A stretch of DNA of 63,912 nt, the filler included, from Octopus bimaculoides (lineage: Eukaryota), in the NCBI RefSeq assembly GCF_001194135.2. It is 5 parts of 5 records of this genome, joined end to end, with 100 filler letters (N's around TTAATTAATTAA, not from the genome) between each part and the next. Parts side by side here need not be neighbours in the genome. Positions count along the whole stretch, not along the records: positions 1 to 30,691 come from NC_069005.1; 4 more parts are not named here. The stretch is one strand, 5' to 3'. The translations under genes and the position numbers were made by a program. How positions within the stretch are numbered: position 1 is the stretch's first letter; the number at the start of each line of letters is the position of its first letter. Shown piece by piece: positions 4,684 through 16,420 of this stretch. The notes beneath the pieces are model-generated. The model was not told the DNA's origin, did no database searches, and saw nothing but the letters and a program-made list of their open reading frames with translations.

Positions 4684-4755
4684 GGGCTCGTCCGGGATTC
4701 GAACCCGGGACCTCTCGCACCCAAAGCGAGAATCATACCCCTAGACCAACGAGCC
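4684..4755 (-). tRNA. tRNA-Pro-TGG: tRNA-Pro(TGG), apparently intact
   Basis: GGCTCGTTGGTCTAGGGGTATGATTCTCGCTTTGGGTGCGAGAGGTCCCGGGTTCGAATCCCGGACGAGCCC: 72 nt, all stems pair, T7 run begins 7 nt downstream (4676-4670). Confidence 0.97.
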
Positions 4756-5826: not shown

Positions 5827-6290
5827 GGGTCACAGTTGTGTACGTCTGCTTCGTTTCTGTAATGGCATCTAGTTCATAATGATTGACTGATGTACAGAGT
5901 GTTTGGAAAGTCACTGCGCGCTTATATTTTTTATTAATATGTCTGTCGCAATATACAATGCAAGAAAAGAATGTGACTGAAAATTATAAACAATGTTGAT
6001 AGTGATGTTTGTGTGTGTACCACCTTTTCCAAATACACTTCAGGGATCTGTACAAGATCCCATTACAGTTGTTAAAACCATATTGAGGGTAGCGATCTGA
6101 AATAGAAAAAGGCAAAATACAATTAGACAAGAATACCCTGTACTATAAAGAGTCCTAGTGATTGTTTATGGAAGATAACTATCCGAATGATTTAGATGTG
6201 AAATTTGAAAGCAGATTATATGAAATTAGACCAGCAGTCTCCAACCGTTATTTCACCACACAAACCGCCAATGTTACCAACAGACTTAAA

Positions 6291-6347
6291 TTTTTTTTTT
6301 TTTATAGCTTCAGCTTAGAGCTGCGGCCATGCTAATACAGCGCCGTT
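6291..6347 (-). mobile_element. Isolated retroposon 3' tail with A13
   Basis: AACGGCGCTGTATTAGCATGGCCGCAGCTCTAAGCTGAAGCTATA13, a variant of the family-A tail (AGCATGGCCGCAG core plus CAG..CTG hairpin). Confidence 0.7.
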
Positions 6348-6356
6348 AAAATACGT

Positions 6357-6438
6357 TAGTAGCAATGAGATTCGAACCCACGCCTCCGAAGAGACTGGTG
6401 CCTAAAACCAGTGTCTTAGATCACTCAGCCACGTTGCC
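6357..6438 (-). pseudogene. tRNA-Leu-TAG: Degenerate tRNA-Leu(TAG)
   Basis: 82 nt. Anticodon arm CTGGT-TTTAGGC-ACCAG, variable arm TCTCTTCGGAGG and T-loop TTCGAAT are intact, but the acceptor stem has two mismatches plus wobbles and the D/T stems are altered. Confidence 0.85.
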
Positions 6439-6673
6439 AACTGCTTTAAAAAAATATGTACACGTTTTTTTTTTTTCATTTTCTTTATTCAAAAAATAAA
6501 AACTATATCCATTTCATAAATGGTGAATCCTCTAGAATATCATAAAGAAATTGGTTTCAAAGCAATGCCCTCACATATCTACCCGCCGCGCGCACACACA
6601 CATACACACACACCTCCCAGCTACTCCATTTTCTCTCATCATCACTTGTTACAGTCATGTCATCCCCCATCTC

Positions 6674-6748
6674 TACTACTTATACTCTCCCTACCCCTCG
6701 CTCTTCTCTATGGGAGAACAGCGAGGGGTAGGGAGAGTATAAGTAGTA
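6674..6748. repeat. Near-perfect 75-nt palindrome/hairpin
   Basis: 6674-6702 is the exact reverse complement of 6720-6748 (29 bp), then one C.C mismatch, TTCTC/GAGAA, 5-nt loop TATGG. Confidence 0.97.
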
Positions 6749-7334
6749 TTATATTATACTTATTTATTGTACTTTTAATTATAATTTTCTTTCTATATGC
6801 GACACTGGTTTTTCATCGATGAGTTCATAAACCTTGGTTCTTTTCCCTAATACTATATATTTATATATATTTTATACTGTGAAACTTAATTTAATTTTAA
6901 TTTTTAATGAATTGATTTTAATTGAGTTTTAACCTGTAATTTTGGATTTTATCCCTAATATTATTAATATACATTATTATTATATATATATATATAGAGA
7001 TAGATAGATAAAGATATACATATATGGACCTTTTCTGTATGGTTGCTTGCGATAGTCAATAAAACAGAAACAAATTTTTAAAATTTATTCTTCCTGTGCG
7101 GCCTGATACCAAACGAACCTCGACATAGCAGTGGTGAGGATTTTACTGGTCCAAGGGAAATAAATCCTACAACTACAGTTCAGGCGGTGTATCATTAAAA
7201 AAGTTTCCAATAGGAATAAGTCTTAACCTTCGCTTTCCAATGGTATCTTCGACTCTCTAACAACGCGCACTTGTTACATTAATGCAACGTCAAGACGTAA
7301 ATAACATAAGTTAGGAGTGATAGAAGAGAGAGAG

Positions 7335-7697
7335 ATGGCTTCGAGTTATAGACGATTTCTAACCCTCTGTAAAAACTGGCCCATAGACACCAGCAAAGCA
7401 GCTGATAAGGACCTCGCCGTCTTCATACGCGAGAATATAGCTAAAACCTTTAGACATGGTGACGCTACACGAATTGAAGAATCGGCAAAATGTGAGAATA
7501 TTTATGAGAGTCTTCAGAGGATATCTGCAGACTACCATCTGAATAAATACCAATTGGATAAGCCTTATGTAACAGCTTCCTGTAAGGCCACTCGAGATGA
7601 ATGTAGAGTGGTACTATCCAAGGAAGGCAGCGATATTATCTTCGAAAATGATGCCAATGTCTTTGACAAAGTGAAATCGAAATTCGAAACAGGGTAA
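7335..7697 (+). CDS. UQCC2: Ubiquinol-cytochrome c reductase complex assembly factor 2 (120 aa), intronless
   Basis: MASSYRRFLTLCKNWPIDTSK..DLAVFIRENIAKTFRHG..CENIYESLQRISADYHLNKY aligns by eye with human [59 protein letters not shown]. Similar length; open frame from ATG 7335 to TAA 7697. Confidence 0.92.
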   Translation: MASSYRRFLTLCKNWPIDTSKAADKDLAVFIRENIAKTFRHGDATRIEESAKCENIYESLQRISADYHLNKYQLDKPYVTASCKATRDECRVVLSKEGSDIIFENDANVFDKVKSKFETG

Positions 7698-7772: not shown

Positions 7773-9269
7773 AGATTAAAGACTTCGTGAGTGTTGTGTC
7801 TATTGGCTTCCTAAAATATGTACTTTTGCTGTCCTGTACCAGTTATTGTATTGTGTTGGCTTACATAACGTTCCTATATTTGCGTAACATTCTTGTCTTT
7901 TACATAGTTGCTTAGATTGCTAGAAATAGTAGCCAACAGCCCTACCTCAAATCACGAACTATCGTCTCAAACAACAACGAATAGGACAATTTGGTTAATA
8001 AGCTTGCTTCCTAACCATGTGGTCTTGGGTTCAGTCCTACTGCACGACAAGTATCGTGGGAAATTATCTTACACTATAGCCTCGGATCGACCAAAGTCTT
8101 GTGAGTCGATTTGGCAAACAAAGAAGCTCGTCAGTTTAGAATCAGTAGTTCTTTGACTGTTATTTCCAAATTTTCAGTATGTTGGAGAAGCAACTCTAGC
8201 TAATCCCTGTATATTTATTATATATATATATATATATATNNNNNNNNNNNNNNNNNNNNNNNNNNNNNNNNNNNNNNNNNNNNNNNNNNNNNNNNNNNNN
8301 NNNNNNNNNNNNNNNNNNNNNNNNNNNNNNNNNNNNNNNNNNNNNNNNNNNNNNNATGCTGTCGGACGAAATCCAAAGAAAACTAAATGACATCTGTCCA
8401 AGGTTGACAACTGCAACACAACTCACTGCAAGTTTTAACATAGCCTTCATCAATCATTTTGTGCAGAAGATGCCTGGCAATAATCAACACTAATGGTGAT
8501 CACACGAGATATTGAGTTCATCTCTTTGGATCCAGGACACTGTCATCACGTGACACCATCTGATGTCAAACATGTTTCAGGAAATGACATTTTATCATTA
8601 AAAAAGAAGGGTTTCTTAATTAGCATTCTTAATCAATGCTATGACAGTCTGTTAATAAAGCAGTTTCTATTTAGTATGTATGTAACGTTTCTTTTGTGGT
8701 TCAGTTTATATATATAAAAAGATCTCCAACCAATCTCTTCTAATATTTGGTGACATGTTCCATACACGACTCAGAAACAATTGGAAAAGATACCTGGATG
8801 ATTGCTTTATCTTGACAAGCCAAGTGAATTTAAAAACATGTTAAACAACCTCAACAATAACATGTGGTTGGGAAGCTATCTTCTTATCACACAGCCAGCC
8901 ATAAATATTTTGTTACATAGTTCAATGTTACAGGTTCAAATCTGCTCTGTAAATTTGACCAAGTTCTTTTTTTTTTCTTCATATTTCAGAAGAATTAACT
9001 GGTTGTCAGAACCAAGGCCTTACAAGAGAAGTCATTCAAATGCATATTGAGAACACCCTGATGCACAGAGGTTGTTTACAACTTTATGACCACAAAGAAA
9101 ATCATGGCAGACTGTGAAGTGAAGATCCTTACCCAAGGCCTTCATCCCTTCAAATTTTTTTCTTTGTAAACTTATTTATTGGCTTTAGTTTGTATCAAAC
9201 AATAAAATTTTTATGCCAGAAACCTTATGAACTATCCTTGCTTTTTCTATTCATTAGCTGAAGGTTTGT

Positions 9270-9640
9270 GGGTAGATTTCTCTCAAACTACCCATACACT
9301 CTCTGTCTCTCTCTCTCTTTCTCTCAAACTATCTGCACTCTCCCTGTTTTCTTCTCCCCCAAACTACCCTACCATACACACACACACACATTTTCTTTCT
9401 CTCTCTCTCGCCCTCTCTTAAACTACCCATACACACATTCTCTCTCAATTTATCTACTCACACATACATACACACACACACTCTCTCTCTCTCTATCTGC
9501 ACTTTGTTTTCCTCTCCCTCAAACTACCCTACCATACACACGTTTTCTTTCTCTCTCTTTCTCACCCTCTCTCAAACTACCCATACACACATTCCCTCTG
9601 AAATTATCCACTCACATACATACACATACAATCTATCCAA
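9270..9640. repeat. Compound CT/CA-rich minisatellite with recurring CTCAAACTACCC(T)A(C)CATACAC motif
   Basis: Motif recurs about 5 times; a block of roughly 170 bp is duplicated. Confidence 0.7.
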
Positions 9641-10004: not shown

Positions 10005-10398
10005 TCTACTATAGGCACAAGGCCTGGAATTTTGGGGGAGGGGATGAGTCGATTACATTGACCCCCCAGTACATAACTAGTGTTTAGTTCATCGACCCCG
10101 AAAGGATGAAAAGCAAAGTTGACCCTGGCAGCATTTGAACTCAGAACTTGAAGACAGACGAAATACCTATTTCGTTATTGCCCACAAGGGGCTAAACATA
10201 GAGGGAACAAACAAGAACAGACGAACGGATTAAGTCGATTACATAGACCCCAGTGCGTAACTGGTACTTAATTTATCGACCCCAAAAGGATGAAAGGCAA
10301 AGTCGACCTCGGCGGAATTTGAACTCAGAACTTGAAGACAGACGAAATACTGCTAAGCATTTCATCCGGCGTGCTAATAATTCTACCAGCTCGCCACC
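10005..10398 (-). mobile_element. Two abutting SINE family B copies (type-1 tail full copy plus headless type-2 tail copy)
   Basis: The central domain ATCGACCCC(G/A)AAAGGATGAAA occurs twice (~10091, ~10277) with different tails and only one head. Confidence 0.85.
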
Positions 10399-11735
10399 CT
10401 GAAGTTTGACAGAATAATGACCATGTAAACAGGGGCCATCTTAGCGTTATAGACACCTGGGCAGATCAATGCACTGGACCCTATAGTATTTATTTATTGA
10501 TAGCCAGTCATAACACATATCGATCAAAGTTAGACCCTGGGATCCTTGAGGGGTCTAGGCAGATCAGTTGAGTATTTATTAACAGCAGGCCACATGACAC
10601 CCACTGATCAGAATTAGGCCCTATGTTCATGAATTTCCCAGGCAACCTTCCAGTATGTCCATGCCTTAAGATGACACTGCATGGAAGTATTTATAAAGGT
10701 TATATACTACTACAAAACAGTCATGAACTCTATAATAAATGGAGGGAATTCTATTGAATGCCATTAAGTTTACACTCAACAGATCTTGTTGCCAACACCA
10801 ACCTTTGGATTTCTGATTTTTGCCACGTATCATAAATGTTCTGATTACAAGATGTTTTCTTATAAATAGTCTTTTATATGCTTGTGCATTATTTAATCCA
10901 TTAGGAATGAATGGACGAATCCATTCATCCAGGTTAGGTGACTTGCCTGGACCAATGTAATCCTTCCATGCCAGTCATCCCATTTGAGCGACGAGGCATG
11001 AATGCCTAGTCTGTTTTTTAGTTACATTGGTCTTTTGCTGGTTGAAATATCTCATTTGTGAATGCCTTAACTGTTGGCGATAGCAGTAGTTCACTAATGG
11101 AATTGGTTGATCCTGGCCATTGACAGGTTTGTTGTCTATGCACCTGCCTAGCATCTAGTAACATTCATCGTTGATTCAGTAAGTTCATCCCCCAAGCTAC
11201 ATCTCATGATTTCAACACACCCAGACTCAGAACAACAGGCAATAATAGGACACTTTAGTCTTGGCACAGACAATGTCTCTCGGACTGATGGTCTGATAAA
11301 ATCATGCAGTCCACTCTATTAAATGATTGGTGACAGGGAAGAGTATCTAGCTGTGAAAGAAACTTATGCCAAGAGAGAATGAACAAAGGTATGGACACGC
11401 CATAAGCTGTGGAGTAAGATACCTGTCTAGGAAGGAAGTAACTTTGAATAAGAACCTGATACAGGTAGAGGAGACTCGCTGAGAGCTTCTACGGGCATCA
11501 TCCTTGCTAGTACCAGCATCAGGGCTAGCTGGTATTCAGTTTGTTTTGTAAAGTGATTGATATCAGGAAGGGGCTTTCGAGTGATAAAACCCAATCCATG
11601 GCATGCACAACAACACAATAGGCTGGTTTTCATTGTTGGTGTGTGTGTGCTAGATAATATAGAGCCATGGTGAGATGTTATGGGTCCCATCCAACCCAAG
11701 CTGGGATGGTAATAAAATAAACAGATGTACAATAT

Positions 11736-12076
11736 GTGTGGTAAGTAGCTTGCTTACCAGCCACATGGTTCCGGGTTCAGTCCCACTGCGTGGCACCTTG
11801 GGCAAGTGTCTTCTACTTATAGCCTCAGGCTGACCAAAGCCTTGTGAGTGGATTTGGTAGATGGAAACTCTGTGTGTCTGTGTTTGTCCCCCCACCATCG
11901 CTTGACAACCAATGCTGGTGTGTTTACGTCCCCGTAACTTAGTGGTTCGGCAAAAAGAGACCGATAGAATAAGTACTAGGCTTACAAAGAAAAAGTCCTG
12001 GGGTCGATGTTCTCGACTAAAAGCGGTACTCCAGTATGGCCGCAGTCAAATGACTGAAACAAGTAAAAGAGTAAAA
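11736..12076 (+). mobile_element. tRNA-derived CORE-like SINE family A, near full length
   Basis: GTGTGGTAAG...GGTTCAGTCC (A/B boxes), CORE-like GCACCTTGGGCAAGTGTCTT, internal microsatellite, tail GCGGTACTCCAGTATGGCCGCAGTCAAATGACTGAAACAAGTAAAAGAG. Further copies or fragments at ~8000-8140, 13841-14152, 14450-14595, 18180-18290, 23760-23925, 29602-29890, 32440-32652, 33983-34190, 37540-37720, 42860-42985, 54670-54780, 62401-62636. Confidence 0.9.
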
Positions 12077-14375: not shown

Positions 14376-15544
14376 TATCCTAGATCAGGGATCAGAGAAC
14401 TTTTTTTAACCAATAACCCCAAAATATATTTATCTATGCCAACGTTTTTTTTCAGTGTCCGTTTACCAAACCCACTCACAAGGTTTTTGGTAGTGCAAGG
14501 CTGTTGTAGAAGATGGCCGAGTTGCCACACAGTGAGACCGAGCCCCAAAAGCATGAGGTCGGGAAGCAAACTCCTTACCATGCAGCCACACCTGATTAAT
14601 TTCTCGATTAGGGATTCAGTTGAGCAAACACCTTGAATGCTCGTCATGGAAATCAAACCAACAACTGATGGAGAACCAGCACCGCCACCGCCACCACCAC
14701 CACCACTACCACCATTGTTTNNNNNNNNNNNNNNNNNNNNNNNNNNNNNNNNNNNNNNNNNNNNNNNNNNNNNNNNNNNNNNNNNNNNNNNNNNNNNNNN
14801 NNNNNNNAGGATAGGGTGGCATTTGTCACACCAATTGTTCTGTTGGAAATATTTTATTGTTAGTTTAATTTCACTAAATAAAACCTTTCACTGTCACTGA
14901 GATCAAATTACTGAAAATAACAAAAACAGAAAAAGAAAATTAGCACCTATTACACTAATTTTTTTTTCGTTTTTGAGCTCGGGTCAAACACGATAGTTTA
15001 GAGGCCATGGGATTAACGATGTGTGACGATGTGAATGTTCCGAGTCCTCTCCCCACCCCCACCCCGTTCGCGAGCGCGCATTTTTTTTTTTTTTCAGTCG
15101 TTCTCAGCAAGCTGTTTTACACCTATTACACTAAATTTTTTTTTGAGCTCGGGTCAAACGCTTTAGTTTGACCAAATTTTTTTTTTTTTATCCCTTCGGA
15201 ACTCGAAACCTCAAAAAGCGAGACGTTGTGGCGAGAGTACAGGACCCCTACATATAAATAGCAGAAGTCTTACGTAAGTCGGCGGGAAAACATGAACTTT
15301 CTATGTTTTGTCTGTTCTCCCTCTTGGATATGCCCAGAGTGGTAAATAAAGAAAAAGTTCGTAGTTTGATCTTCGAAGTCCAGGTACAGTTCGATTTAGT
15401 TTGTTGGAAATATTGATTGTTGATTCATTACGTGTTTGTTACTGCCGCTGTTTCTATTTTGTATTGTTATAACCCTATTACAATGTATTCTTCATCTATT
15501 GTCGACAATTTCAATCGTACTTCCGATATTGGAGACGTAAGGAT

Positions 15545-16420
15545 ATAAACAGACACCTGCCTTTACACTAAATTCATCACTGAAGTCATTTGCCAATTCT
15601 TACTTTACTTCGTGTATCATTGTACGTAACTTGTTCAAGCTATGTAACATGAACATCTGCACAAGCCATTCGCCAATTCCTGGCTTCTGTCGTGCCCACC
15701 AGATAACTGAACATGGTACCCTGTCAAATGCTTTCTCCAAATCAACAAAAATCAGAAACAGTGGCTTATTCTTAGCCTTGTATTTCTGTAGTTGCCACAG
15801 GGAAGATTTCGTTTGTAGTGTCTCATCTGCATCACATCCAGGTAGATTCTATGATGGATCGATTGGGCCATGGCTTTCTCTGTGACCTTCGTAACTTGAT
15901 CTACAGGTCTGATTCCTCTATATAGTTGCTCCTCTCTAAGGCATCGCTTTTGTCCTTGTAACAGTTTATGATAATGCTGCAATGCCAGTCATAGGGAATG
16001 ACAACCTCCTGGATGGTTATATTGACTATCCAAATGGCAATACTGTATCCCACTTCATGAACCTGTGACTTTCCCCACTCTTCATATTCTTGATCACTTT
16101 ATCTACCACATTGCTGTTAACTTGAATCACTGTTCCCTCTGTTGGATCAGCATGGGATAATCCGTTTGTCCCATGCATTCTCCTCATTCAAAAGCCTTTC
16201 ATTATAGCACTTCCACACCACTTACTTTTGTTCCAATCAATGGCAAGTTTGCTGTCGTTATTTCAAACACACTTCTTACTAATGTCAACTTGTTTCTCTC
16301 TTACACATTGTCTCGTAGTCCTGAACACTTCTCACCTCTGATCCTCAAGCTGCAGAACATATGCAAACGTCTTCTTTTCTGCCTCATCTTAAGCCATGCA
16401 CATCTAATGCCTAGATACCC
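15545..16420 (-). mobile_element. RTE-clade LINE reverse transcriptase fragment (pseudogenised)
   Basis: Across frameshifts: VIPYDW..IINCYKDKSDALERSNYRGI..DQVTKVTEK..QKYKAKNKPLFLIFVDLEKAFDRVP..WW..GIGEWLV, i.e. the typical RT domain 0-3 motifs. Confidence 0.88.

What the first reader, a model, noticed from the sequence alone, without database searches (positions are those of the whole stretch)
6273..6450. Pre-tRNA-Leu plus trailer plus TTTT fused to tail variant and poly(A), flanked by a decayed 18-bp direct repeat (chimera 2 of 3)
Seen (minus strand): tRNA-Leu(TAG) 82 nt, trailer ACGTA, TTTT, then AACGGCGCTGTATTAGCATGGCCGCAGCTCTAAGCTGAAGCTAT-A13. The flanks GTTACCAACAGACTTAAA (6273-6290) and GTTGCCAACTGCTTTAAA (6433-6450) match 14/18, the second overlapping the first 6 nt of the tRNA. 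Inference: the whole unit inserted as one retrocopy with a TSD and 5' microhomology; the retained trailer and terminator point to an unprocessed pre-tRNA as template. Structurally this is a minimal proto-SINE (tRNA promoter plus LINE tail).
Basis: partly seen in the sequence, partly recalled or inferred. Interest (0 to 1): 0.72.

Follow-up and report, generated by a model that had tools for sequence, protein, structure and literature searches.

The report
Pre-tRNA-Leu fused to retroposon tail
An octopus-family genome carries a dead 163-base retrocopy in which an unprocessed leucine tRNA precursor is joined to the last 44 bases and poly(A) of a SINE/LINE-type tail; a sister species has the empty site, so it is a clean but ordinary example of the chimeras thought to give rise to SINEs.

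Summary
On the minus strand lie an 82-nt tRNA-Leu(TAG) (6438-6357), ACGTA, TTTT, a 44-nt tail, A13, and 14/18 direct repeats.

The window is octopod DNA. Its UQCC2 protein is 89% identical to that of Octopus sinensis. The O. sinensis orthologous locus lacks window 6288-6450 and carries the repeat once. Deleting the insert plus one repeat restores colinearity. The tRNA, trailer, terminator, tail and poly(A) therefore arrived in one retrotransposition event with a 14-18 bp target-site duplication.

The tail resembles the 3' end of an abundant octopod SINE. They share the 13-mer AGCATGGCCGCAG, a two-hairpin fold, and a second hairpin kept by compensatory changes. The partner LINE was not identified.

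The tRNA is a pseudogene (27.8 bits, below Rfam's 29), though its A and B boxes are 10/11 intact.

The best mechanism is reverse-transcriptase template switching from a retroposon tail RNA to a 3'-unprocessed pre-tRNA, as in U6/LINE chimeras. The main rival is a read-through transcript from a master locus. Distinguishing them needs a genome-wide copy count, which these tools cannot do.

The internal TTTT would stop Pol III before the tail, so the copy is probably dead on arrival. It is a new member of a known kind.

The parts
6433..6450 (-). Left (5') copy of the target-site duplication, TTTAAAGCAGTTGGCAAC. Its last 6 nt (GGCAAC) double as tRNA positions 1-6, so the exact junction is ambiguous and is a zone of microhomology.
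   Evidence: The sequence is single-copy in O. sinensis, as TTTTAAAAGTTTGTTGGGTTAT.
6357..6438 (-). tRNA-Leu(TAG) pseudogene, 82 nt, class II with a long variable arm. The A box TGGCTGAGTGA and the B box GGTTCGAATCT each match their consensus at 10/11 positions. There are mismatches in the acceptor and D stems.
   Evidence: ARAGORN. Rfam tRNA 27.8 bits against a gathering score of 29. Twelve transitions relative to real insect tRNA-Leu genes. Absent from the O. sinensis orthologous site.
6352..6356 (-). 3' trailer ACGTA. It is not CCA, so the template was not a mature tRNA.
   Evidence: For comparison, the resident tRNA-Pro gene has the trailer TCGTTG followed by T7.
6348..6351 (-). TTTT. A minimal Pol III terminator or oligo(U) end of the nascent pre-tRNA, and the junction to the tail.
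   Evidence: The role of T4 as terminator rests on established knowledge, as cited in PMC4758252.
6304..6347 (-). 44-nt retroposon 3' tail variant. It has two hairpins (CGGC..GCCG and CAGCU-cua-AGCUG) followed by AAGCUAU.
   Evidence: It shares the 13-mer AGCATGGCCGCAG with the abundant SINE's 3' end. The local alignment score is 28, against a maximum of 24 in 5000 shuffles. The two-hairpin fold is shared, with compensatory changes in hairpin 2.
6291..6303 (-). Poly(A) tract, A13.
6273..6290 (-). Right (3') copy of the target-site duplication, TTTAAGTCTGTTGGTAAC.
   Evidence: It continues colinearly into the O. sinensis sequence.

Best explanation
This is a bipartite chimeric retrocopy made in one target-primed reverse-transcription event in an octopod lineage, probably after its split from O. 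sinensis; no outgroup covers the site to fix the direction.

The proposed sequence of steps is as follows. A non-LTR retrotransposon enzyme nicked an A/T-rich site about 885 bp upstream of UQCC2. It began cDNA synthesis on the poly(A) and 3' tail of a retroposon RNA, a variant of the tail carried by the abundant octopod SINE. It copied only the terminal two-hairpin module of 44 nt. It then switched template onto the 3' oligo(U) end of a nascent tRNA-Leu(UAG) precursor that was 5'-matured but still carried its 3' trailer. It copied that precursor to, or nearly to, its 5' end. The cDNA end was joined to the target through microhomology (target GGTAAC..., tRNA GG[C/T]A[A/G]C...), which produced a 14-18 bp target-site duplication.

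Shown: the anatomy, the single-event insertion with an empty site in a sister species, the tail's homology to a SINE 3' end, and the pseudogene state of the tRNA. Inferred: the template switch itself, the identity of the enzyme, and the processing state of the pre-tRNA.

The copy has near-intact A and B boxes. Its own TTTT lies before the tail, so Pol III transcripts would lack the tail. It is most likely a dead-on-arrival snapshot of how a SINE could be born, not a working SINE.
For: - **Anatomy.** Exact as described.
- **Empty site.** blastn aligns window 6230-6287 to L001 7579-7637 and window 6451-6675 to L001 7640-7865, so window 6288-6450 is missing from O. sinensis. Removing the insert and one repeat restores a colinear alignment. 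O. sinensis has a single copy of the repeat.
- **No tRNA-Leu in relatives.** None lies between tRNA-Pro and UQCC2 in O. sinensis or Argonauta.
- **Repeat significance.** P = 0.0004-0.0024 against shuffles.
- **Tail.** Homologous to the SINE 3' end, with the same two-hairpin fold and compensatory hairpin-2 changes.
- **No CCA.** Trailer plus T4 resembles a genuine tRNA gene terminator.
- **Precedent.** U6/LINE chimeras formed by template switching are documented for the L1, L2 and RTE clades. The same mechanism is the proposed route by which stringent-LINE tails are transferred to tRNAs (PMC4476161; PMC5786205).
Against: - The parental tRNA-Leu(TAG) gene, the source element of this tail variant and the partner LINE were not found. 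No tool here searches eukaryotic genomes by DNA.
- A unique junction, which template switching predicts, was not demonstrated.
- The nick site (5'-CTTTAAA/AAAAAA on the primed strand) is not the L1 TTTT/AA consensus, so the enzyme is unknown.
- The abundant SINE ends in ...AAGTAAAAGAGTAAA rather than pure poly(A). The tail therefore comes from a different, unseen subfamily.
- The tRNA part is more diverged (14.6%, all transitions) than expected for a post-split copy of a canonical gene. This could mean the source was already a decayed master copy.
- The polarity (insertion rather than precise deletion) lacks a nucleotide-level outgroup.
Confidence: 0.68

Rival explanations
1. The unit is a copy of a low-copy proto-SINE or master locus. 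Somewhere in the genome a tRNA-Leu-like gene is directly followed by a 5'-truncated retroposon tail. Pol III reads through the weak T4, and the tail lets the LINE enzyme retrotranspose the transcript. This unit is one offspring.
For: - The A and B boxes are intact at 10/11 each (sequence).
- The tRNA part carries 12 transitions, about three times the per-lineage divergence. That fits an already decayed source.
- Some mollusc SINEs carry internal T4-T5 runs and are still thought to be transcribed (PMC4758252).
Against: - No second copy of the tail variant or of the fusion exists in the 30.7-kb piece or in about 60 kb of O. sinensis and Argonauta DNA.
- None appeared in the protein-index search with junction-spanning peptides, though that test is weak.
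- T4 followed by A is not the read-through context (T-run followed by C) described in PMC4758252.
Confidence: 0.2
2. Two successive insertions at one spot. First a tailless pre-tRNA-Leu retropseudogene inserted. Then a 5'-truncated retroposon tail with poly(A) inserted at its TTTT/AA end.
For: A short TTTAA is present both at the left edge of the tail (TTTTAAC) and right after the poly(A) (TTTAAG). Tailless and pre-tRNA retropseudogenes are known in mammals (Schmitz 2004, as cited in PMC4476161).
Against: - It needs two independent hits at the same nucleotide in one lineage.
- A 5-nt A/T match is expected by chance in DNA with 31-36% GC.
- The 14-18 bp duplication brackets the whole unit, and the right copy abuts the poly(A). 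That is what one TPRT event predicts.
Confidence: 0.04
3. The tRNA-Leu is a resident gene and a retroposon tail landed beside it. The empty site in O. sinensis is then a secondary precise deletion between the direct repeats.
For: Argonauta does not align at the site, so polarity is not fixed by an outgroup. The repeats differ at 4 of 18 positions, which is rather old for a post-split event.
Against: - Direct repeats that bracket the tRNA plus tail plus poly(A) are themselves the signature of retro-insertion of the whole unit.
- No tRNA-Leu lies in the tRNA-Pro to UQCC2 interval of O. sinensis or Argonauta, whereas the real tRNA-Pro is conserved in all three.
- The tRNA fails the Rfam threshold.
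Confidence: 0.03

Closest known systems
U6/LINE bipartite chimeric retrogenes made by RT template switching (Buzdin et al. 2002/2003, cited from references and not read here; Doucet et al. 2015, PMC4476161)
   Same: - The 5' part is a full-length Pol III transcript in sense orientation, retaining its own 3' T-run.
- The 3' part is a 5'-truncated retroposon 3' end.
- One target-site duplication flanks the whole chimera.
- Such chimeras are reported for stringent LINE clades (L2, RTE) as well as L1.
   Different: - The 5' partner here is a pre-tRNA-Leu, not U6.
- The host is a cephalopod.
- The 3' part is only 44 nt, and its source LINE is unidentified.
- The nick site is not the L1 consensus.
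tRNA/LINE-1 chimeric insertions in mammals (bioRxiv 10.1101/2025.02.02.635956)
   Same: A tRNA sequence and a LINE sequence are inserted together, with 9-19 bp duplications.
   Different: The mammalian cases are mostly tRNA halves in antisense orientation, attributed to twin priming. Here the tRNA is full length, in sense orientation, and carries its trailer and terminator.
tRNA-derived SINEs with a LINE-type tail, including the octopod CORE/Ceph-like SINE in this window (11730-12075)
   Same: A head with A and B boxes plus a 3' tail module homologous to the SINE's own tail. The template-switch origin model for SINEs predicts exactly this architecture.
   Different: - There is no body domain.
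- The tRNA is almost unmodified.
- An internal TTTT lies before the tail.
- No evidence of multiple copies.
- The unit ends in pure A13, not the SINE's AAGTAAAAGAGTAAA end.
Pre-tRNA and tailless retropseudogenes (Schmitz et al. 2004, as cited in PMC4476161)
   Same: An unprocessed tRNA precursor served as the retrotransposition template, which implies recruitment in the nucleus.
   Different: Those lack a LINE tail and poly(A). This unit has both.

Membership tests
Template-switch chimeric retrocopy (U6/LINE type) | The 5' part is a small Pol III RNA, in sense orientation, complete to its 3' end. | tested here: met
   An 82-nt tRNA-Leu plus trailer plus T4, in the same orientation as the tail.
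Template-switch chimeric retrocopy (U6/LINE type) | The 3' part is a 5'-truncated 3' end of a retroposon or polyadenylated RNA. | tested here: met
   A 44-nt tail homologous to the SINE 3' end, followed by A13. The exact source element was not found.
Template-switch chimeric retrocopy (U6/LINE type) | A single target-site duplication brackets the whole chimera, and the site is empty in a relative. | tested here: met
   14/18 repeats. The O. sinensis site is empty and carries one copy.
Template-switch chimeric retrocopy (U6/LINE type) | The two parts come from separate loci, so the junction is unique in the genome. | not testable with these tools
   No eukaryotic genome DNA search is available. 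The indirect searches were negative or uninformative.
Template-switch chimeric retrocopy (U6/LINE type) | An L1-type endonuclease site (TTTT/AA) at the nick. | tested here: not met
   The nick is inferred at 5'-CTTTAAA/AAAAAA on the primed strand. This feature defines L1-made chimeras only, not those made by L2 or RTE.
tRNA-derived SINE | An internal Pol III promoter (A and B boxes). | tested here: met
   TGGCTGAGTGA and GGTTCGAATCT, each 10/11 to the consensus recalled from established knowledge.
tRNA-derived SINE | A 3' tail shared with a partner LINE. | tested here: inconclusive
   The tail is shared at about 70-76% identity with another SINE's tail. No LINE with this tail was found. The RT fragment at 15603-15988 is unlinked.
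tRNA-derived SINE | A multi-copy dispersed family. | not testable with these tools
   One copy in about 90 kb of octopod DNA. Genome-wide count not possible.
tRNA-derived SINE | The transcript reaches the tail, with no Pol III terminator before it. | tested here: not met
   TTTT at 6348-6351 lies between the head and the tail.
Functional tRNA-Leu(UAG) gene | A cloverleaf above the model threshold, with intact stems. | tested here: not met
   27.8 bits against a gathering score of 29. C3·A70 and A5·C68 are mismatched, there is a D-stem mismatch, and G19 is lost.
Functional tRNA-Leu(UAG) gene | Conserved at the orthologous locus. | tested here: not met
   Absent in O. sinensis and Argonauta, whereas the neighbouring tRNA-Pro is conserved.
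tRNA-gene-targeting retrotransposon insertion (TRE/Ty3 style) | A pre-existing tRNA gene next to which the element lands. | tested here: not met
   The tRNA itself is part of the insertion.
U6 snRNA-derived sequence (tail) | A significant match to the U6 model. | tested here: not met
   14.3 bits against a gathering score of 44, E = 0.32 in a 201-nt search. Only the 12-mer ATTAGCATGGCC is exact. The related SINE tail gives no U6 hit.

The most novel reading that the evidence does not exclude
Octopod genomes may harbour a recurrent class of pre-tRNA/retroposon-tail chimeras, that is, an observable and ongoing SINE-birth pathway. Under this reading the unit descends from an already diverged tRNA-Leu-like master that reads through its T4. 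The all-transition excess in the head would then reflect either that older history or deaminase editing of retrotransposition intermediates.
Probability: 0.15. Interest if true: 0.65.

Novelty: new member of a known kind. Interest (0 to 1): 0.42.

Why it matters
The template-switch model of SINE origin holds that a LINE reverse transcriptase jumps from a LINE or SINE tail onto a tRNA. It rests mostly on finished SINEs and on U6/L1 chimeras in mammals.

A dated, single-event chimera with these properties is a direct picture of the postulated first step, in a lineage whose genome is rich in SINEs:
- the tRNA is still almost canonical;
- it keeps its trailer and terminator;
- it is fused to just the minimal two-hairpin recognition module of a tail.

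It also shows why most such births fail, because the retained terminator cuts the tail off any Pol III transcript. If a genome-wide survey found many such chimeras, octopods could become a system for studying SINE genesis. As a single locus it is a neat textbook example rather than a surprise.

Tried and rejected
1. **Other chimeras or tail copies in the piece.** blastn-short and mismatch searches found none. The poly(A) tracts at 585, 12618, 15081, 15177, 19410 and 24977 have no tRNA upstream.
2. **tRNA-Pro 4684-4755 as a chimera.** Rejected. It is conserved and syntenic in three species and has no tail.
3. **Window species in the protein or contig index.** The exact UQCC2 product is not on record.
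4. **Partner LINE.** A decayed RT fragment (15603-15988) used as a protein query gave no hits. Pfam scan of 37 of the window's 55 long reading frames (six of eight packed query sets) found only a carboxylesterase.
5. **More copies of the fusion via junction-spanning peptides.** Only insect tRNA-antisense ORFs came back. Those loci were reused as real tRNA-Leu references.
6. **Metagenome DNA scans.** The exact tail core gave 0 hits. A degenerate tail pattern gave 120 hits, whose similarity to the unit and to the SINE 3' end did not extend beyond the seed.
7. **Tail as U6.** Sub-threshold, and not shared by the related SINE tail.
8. **Argonauta as a nucleotide-level outgroup.** The site does not align.
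9. **MAFFT two-sequence alignment of the locus.** It mis-placed the gap and was replaced by an explicit empty-site reconstruction.

Full report
**What is in the sequence**

Read on the minus strand, window 6450-6273 contains the following parts in order:

| Part | Coordinates | Sequence or size |
|---|---|---|
| Left repeat | 6450-6433 | TTTAAAGCAGTTGGCAAC |
| tRNA-Leu(TAG) | 6438-6357 | 82 nt |
| Trailer | 6356-6352 | ACGTA |
| T-run | 6351-6348 | TTTT |
| Tail | 6347-6304 | 44 nt, AACGGCGCTGTATTAGCATGGCCGCAGCTCTAAGCTGAAGCTAT |
| Poly(A) | 6303-6291 | A13 |
| Right repeat | 6290-6273 | TTTAAGTCTGTTGGTAAC |

The repeats match 14/18, and the left one overlaps tRNA positions 1-6. ARAGORN calls tRNA-Leu(tag). 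Rfam's tRNA model scores it 27.8 bits, just below the gathering score of 29, with non-standard pairs in the acceptor and D stems.

**Is the repeat more than chance?**

With the right copy anchored at the end of the poly(A), a match of at least 14/18 occurs in 0.04% of shuffled flanks. At any offset it occurs in 0.24%. In real pairs from this low-complexity window with the same geometry the figures are 0.9% and 2.6%. The repeat is suggestive alone but not conclusive.

**Where the window comes from**

The ORF at 7335-7697 encodes UQCC2. It is 89% identical to the Octopus sinensis protein and 68% identical to that of Argonauta hians. The window is therefore octopod DNA. Aligned non-coding sequence differs from O. 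sinensis by about 9% in substitutions.

**The decisive test: the orthologous site**

The O. sinensis locus (L001, CM016883.1) was fetched through UQCC2.
- blastn aligns window 6230-6287 to L001 7579-7637 and window 6451-6675 to L001 7640-7865. Window 6288-6450 has no counterpart.
- On the same strand O. sinensis reads ...ATATATTTTAAAAGTTTGTTGGGTTATATTGGCGG..., which is one copy of the repeat.
- Removing the insert plus one repeat from the window gives a colinear alignment across the site.
- No tRNA-like sequence lies between tRNA-Pro and UQCC2 in O. sinensis or Argonauta. The real tRNA-Pro(TGG) (window 4684-4755, 56.7 bits) is conserved and syntenic in all three species.

The tRNA, trailer, terminator, tail and poly(A) therefore entered together, flanked by a 14-18 bp target-site duplication. 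Argonauta does not align at the site itself. Insertion rather than precise deletion thus rests on parsimony and on the duplication, not on an outgroup.

**What the tail is**

The tail has no second copy in the piece. It does share the exact 13-mer AGCATGGCCGCAG, plus flanking similarity, with the 3' end of an abundant octopod SINE. Copies of that SINE lie at window 11730-12075 and in L001 near 9430, 12876, 15248 and 17065.
- The local alignment score is 28. Shuffles average 12 and reach at most 24 in 5000 trials.
- Both tails fold into two adjacent hairpins followed by an A-rich end.
- The second hairpin is CAGCU-cua-AGCUG in the unit and CAGUCA-aa-UGACUG in the SINE. The outer pairs are kept and the inner pairs are changed on both sides.
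- The SINE body contains CCTTGGG, a CORE/Ceph-type motif. Kojima (PMC5786205) links Ceph-SINE tails to RTE LINEs.

The 44 nt are therefore a diverged variant (about 70-76% identical) of a retroposon 3' recognition module. The abundant SINE ends in AAGTAAAAGAGTAAA, not A13. The actual donor is thus an unseen subfamily, and its LINE was not identified.

A weak resemblance to the 3' half of U6 was found: an exact 12-mer, 14.3 bits against a gathering score of 44, and E = 0.32 in a 201-nt search. The SINE tail does not share it. I treat it as chance.

**State of the tRNA**

I compared the unit with real insect tRNA-Leu(AAG) genes fetched as references. Besides the anticodon it differs at 12 positions. 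All 12 are transitions, 11 are G/C to A/T, and 4 lie at CpG.
- Five of the changes turn G-C pairs into G·U pairs.
- Others create mismatches: C3·A70, A5·C68 and one in the D stem.
- One removes G19.
- The A box (TGGCTGAGTGA) and B box (GGTTCGAATCT) each keep 10/11 consensus positions. The consensus is recalled from established knowledge.

The unit is a pseudogene with a near-intact Pol III promoter.

The background ts/tv ratio between the two species is 1.26. Twelve out of twelve transitions therefore has a probability of about 0.001. The 14.6% divergence is about three times the per-lineage 4.7%. The right flank is also unusually diverged, at 21%. This excess remains unexplained. Possible causes:
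- an already decayed source copy;
- deaminase editing;
- a locally high substitution rate;
- a poor proxy for the true octopod parent.

**Mechanism**

The absence of CCA, and the 5-nt trailer plus T4, match the 3' end of a nascent Pol III pre-tRNA. The neighbouring tRNA-Pro gene has the trailer TCGTTG followed by T7. There is no 5' leader. The tRNA's first bases coincide with the end of the duplication. The target sequence (GGTAACATTGGCGG) resembles the tRNA 5' end (GGTAGCG-TGGCCG in the reference genes). The 5' junction is therefore a zone of microhomology whose exact breakpoint cannot be fixed.

The simplest account is a single target-primed reverse transcription. Priming occurred on a retroposon tail RNA, 44 nt were copied, and the enzyme then switched template to the oligo(U) end of a pre-tRNA-Leu. 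This mirrors U6/LINE chimeras, which are documented for L1, L2 and RTE. It is also the proposed route by which stringent-LINE tails reach tRNAs to found SINEs (PMC4476161; PMC5786205). Mammalian tRNA/L1 chimeras differ: they are mostly antisense tRNA halves (bioRxiv 10.1101/2025.02.02.635956).

The inferred nick (5'-CTTTAAA/AAAAAA on the primed strand) is not the L1 consensus. That fits a non-L1 enzyme but does not identify it.

**Rivals**

- **Master locus.** A tRNA-Leu-like gene followed by this tail is read through at T4 and retrotransposed. This would also explain the decayed head. It predicts many copies with the same junction. I could not count copies, because no eukaryotic DNA search is available. 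The indirect attempts were negative or uninformative. I give it about 0.2.
- **Two successive insertions.** About 0.04.
- **A resident tRNA with a later precise deletion in O. sinensis.** About 0.03.

The last two are much less parsimonious, given that one duplication brackets the whole unit.

**Is it a proto-SINE?**

Structurally it is: a promoter-bearing tRNA head plus a tail recognition module. Functionally it probably is not. The TTTT between head and tail is a Pol III terminator and is followed by A. Read-through in mollusc SINEs is associated with a C after the T-run (PMC4758252). Transcripts from this copy would therefore lack the tail.

**Verdict**

The object is a new, cleanly resolved member of a known class, the template-switch chimeric retrocopies, found in a cephalopod. 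Interest is moderate. It would rise if a genome-wide survey showed many such chimeras or an amplifying family.

Noticed in passing
window 6673-6749: A near-perfect hairpin of about 75 nt (35 base pairs, -63.9 kcal/mol, z = -12.4). Its arms are 98-100% identical to O. sinensis L001 7911-7955, while surrounding non-coding DNA is about 79-92% identical. Rfam gives only sub-threshold miRNA-like hits on both strands. It may be a conserved miRNA-like precursor or a palindromic element, 230 bp from the unit.
   Followed up: partly
window 4684-4755 (-): A genuine tRNA-Pro(TGG) gene (56.7 bits) with trailer TCGTTG and T7. It is syntenic with UQCC2 in O. sinensis (L001 5771-5842) and Argonauta hians (L002 8783-8855). 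It served as the control for what a resident tRNA gene looks like.
   Followed up: yes
window 6357-6438 (-): All 12 differences from canonical tRNA-Leu are transitions, 11 of them G/C to A/T and only 4 at CpG. The background ts/tv is 1.26 and per-lineage divergence is about 4.7%. The excess is unexplained: possible causes are an older source copy, deaminase editing, a local rate effect or a poor proxy.
   Followed up: partly
window 6304-6335 (-): The tail contains ATTAGCATGGCC, an exact 12-mer of the conserved U6 snRNA 3' half. The Rfam U6 score is only 14.3 bits (E = 0.32 in 201 nt), and the related SINE tail shows no U6 hit.
   Followed up: yes
window 11730-12075 (+); also 2334-2572 and 10047-10415; L001 many copies: Abundant octopod SINE families. 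The copy at 11730-12075 has a CCTTGGG (CORE/Ceph-like) motif and the 3' end ...AGCATGGCCGCAGTCAAATGACTGAAACAAGTAAAAGAGTAAA. It is orthologous to L001 16570-17090. O. sinensis has extra SINE insertions (L001 about 8010-9450) that are absent from the window.
   Followed up: partly
window 15603-15988 (-) and 8686-8841 (+): Decayed reverse-transcriptase fragments. One has the LINE motif FVDLEKAFDRVP and one has a YLDD motif. Neither is linked to the tail. A protein search with the first returned nothing.
   Followed up: partly
window 15177-15215 (-): The sequence ...CTCGC TTTTT GAGGTTTCGAGTTCCGAAGGGAT A13 TTT... ends much like the unit's ...CTGAAGCTAT A13 TTT. No known RNA family lies upstream, and the region is beyond the O. 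sinensis locus that was fetched. It may be another short retrocopy tail.
   Followed up: partly
window 25470-25799 and 26640-27674 (-): Exons of a carboxylesterase-family gene (Pfam COesterase, E = 1e-49).
   Followed up: no
L002 10482-10554 (+) and 7854-7925 (+): Argonauta hians carries tRNA-like SINE heads (Rfam tRNA 37 and 29.7 bits) beside UQCC2. They are unrelated in sequence to the tRNA-Leu unit.
   Followed up: no
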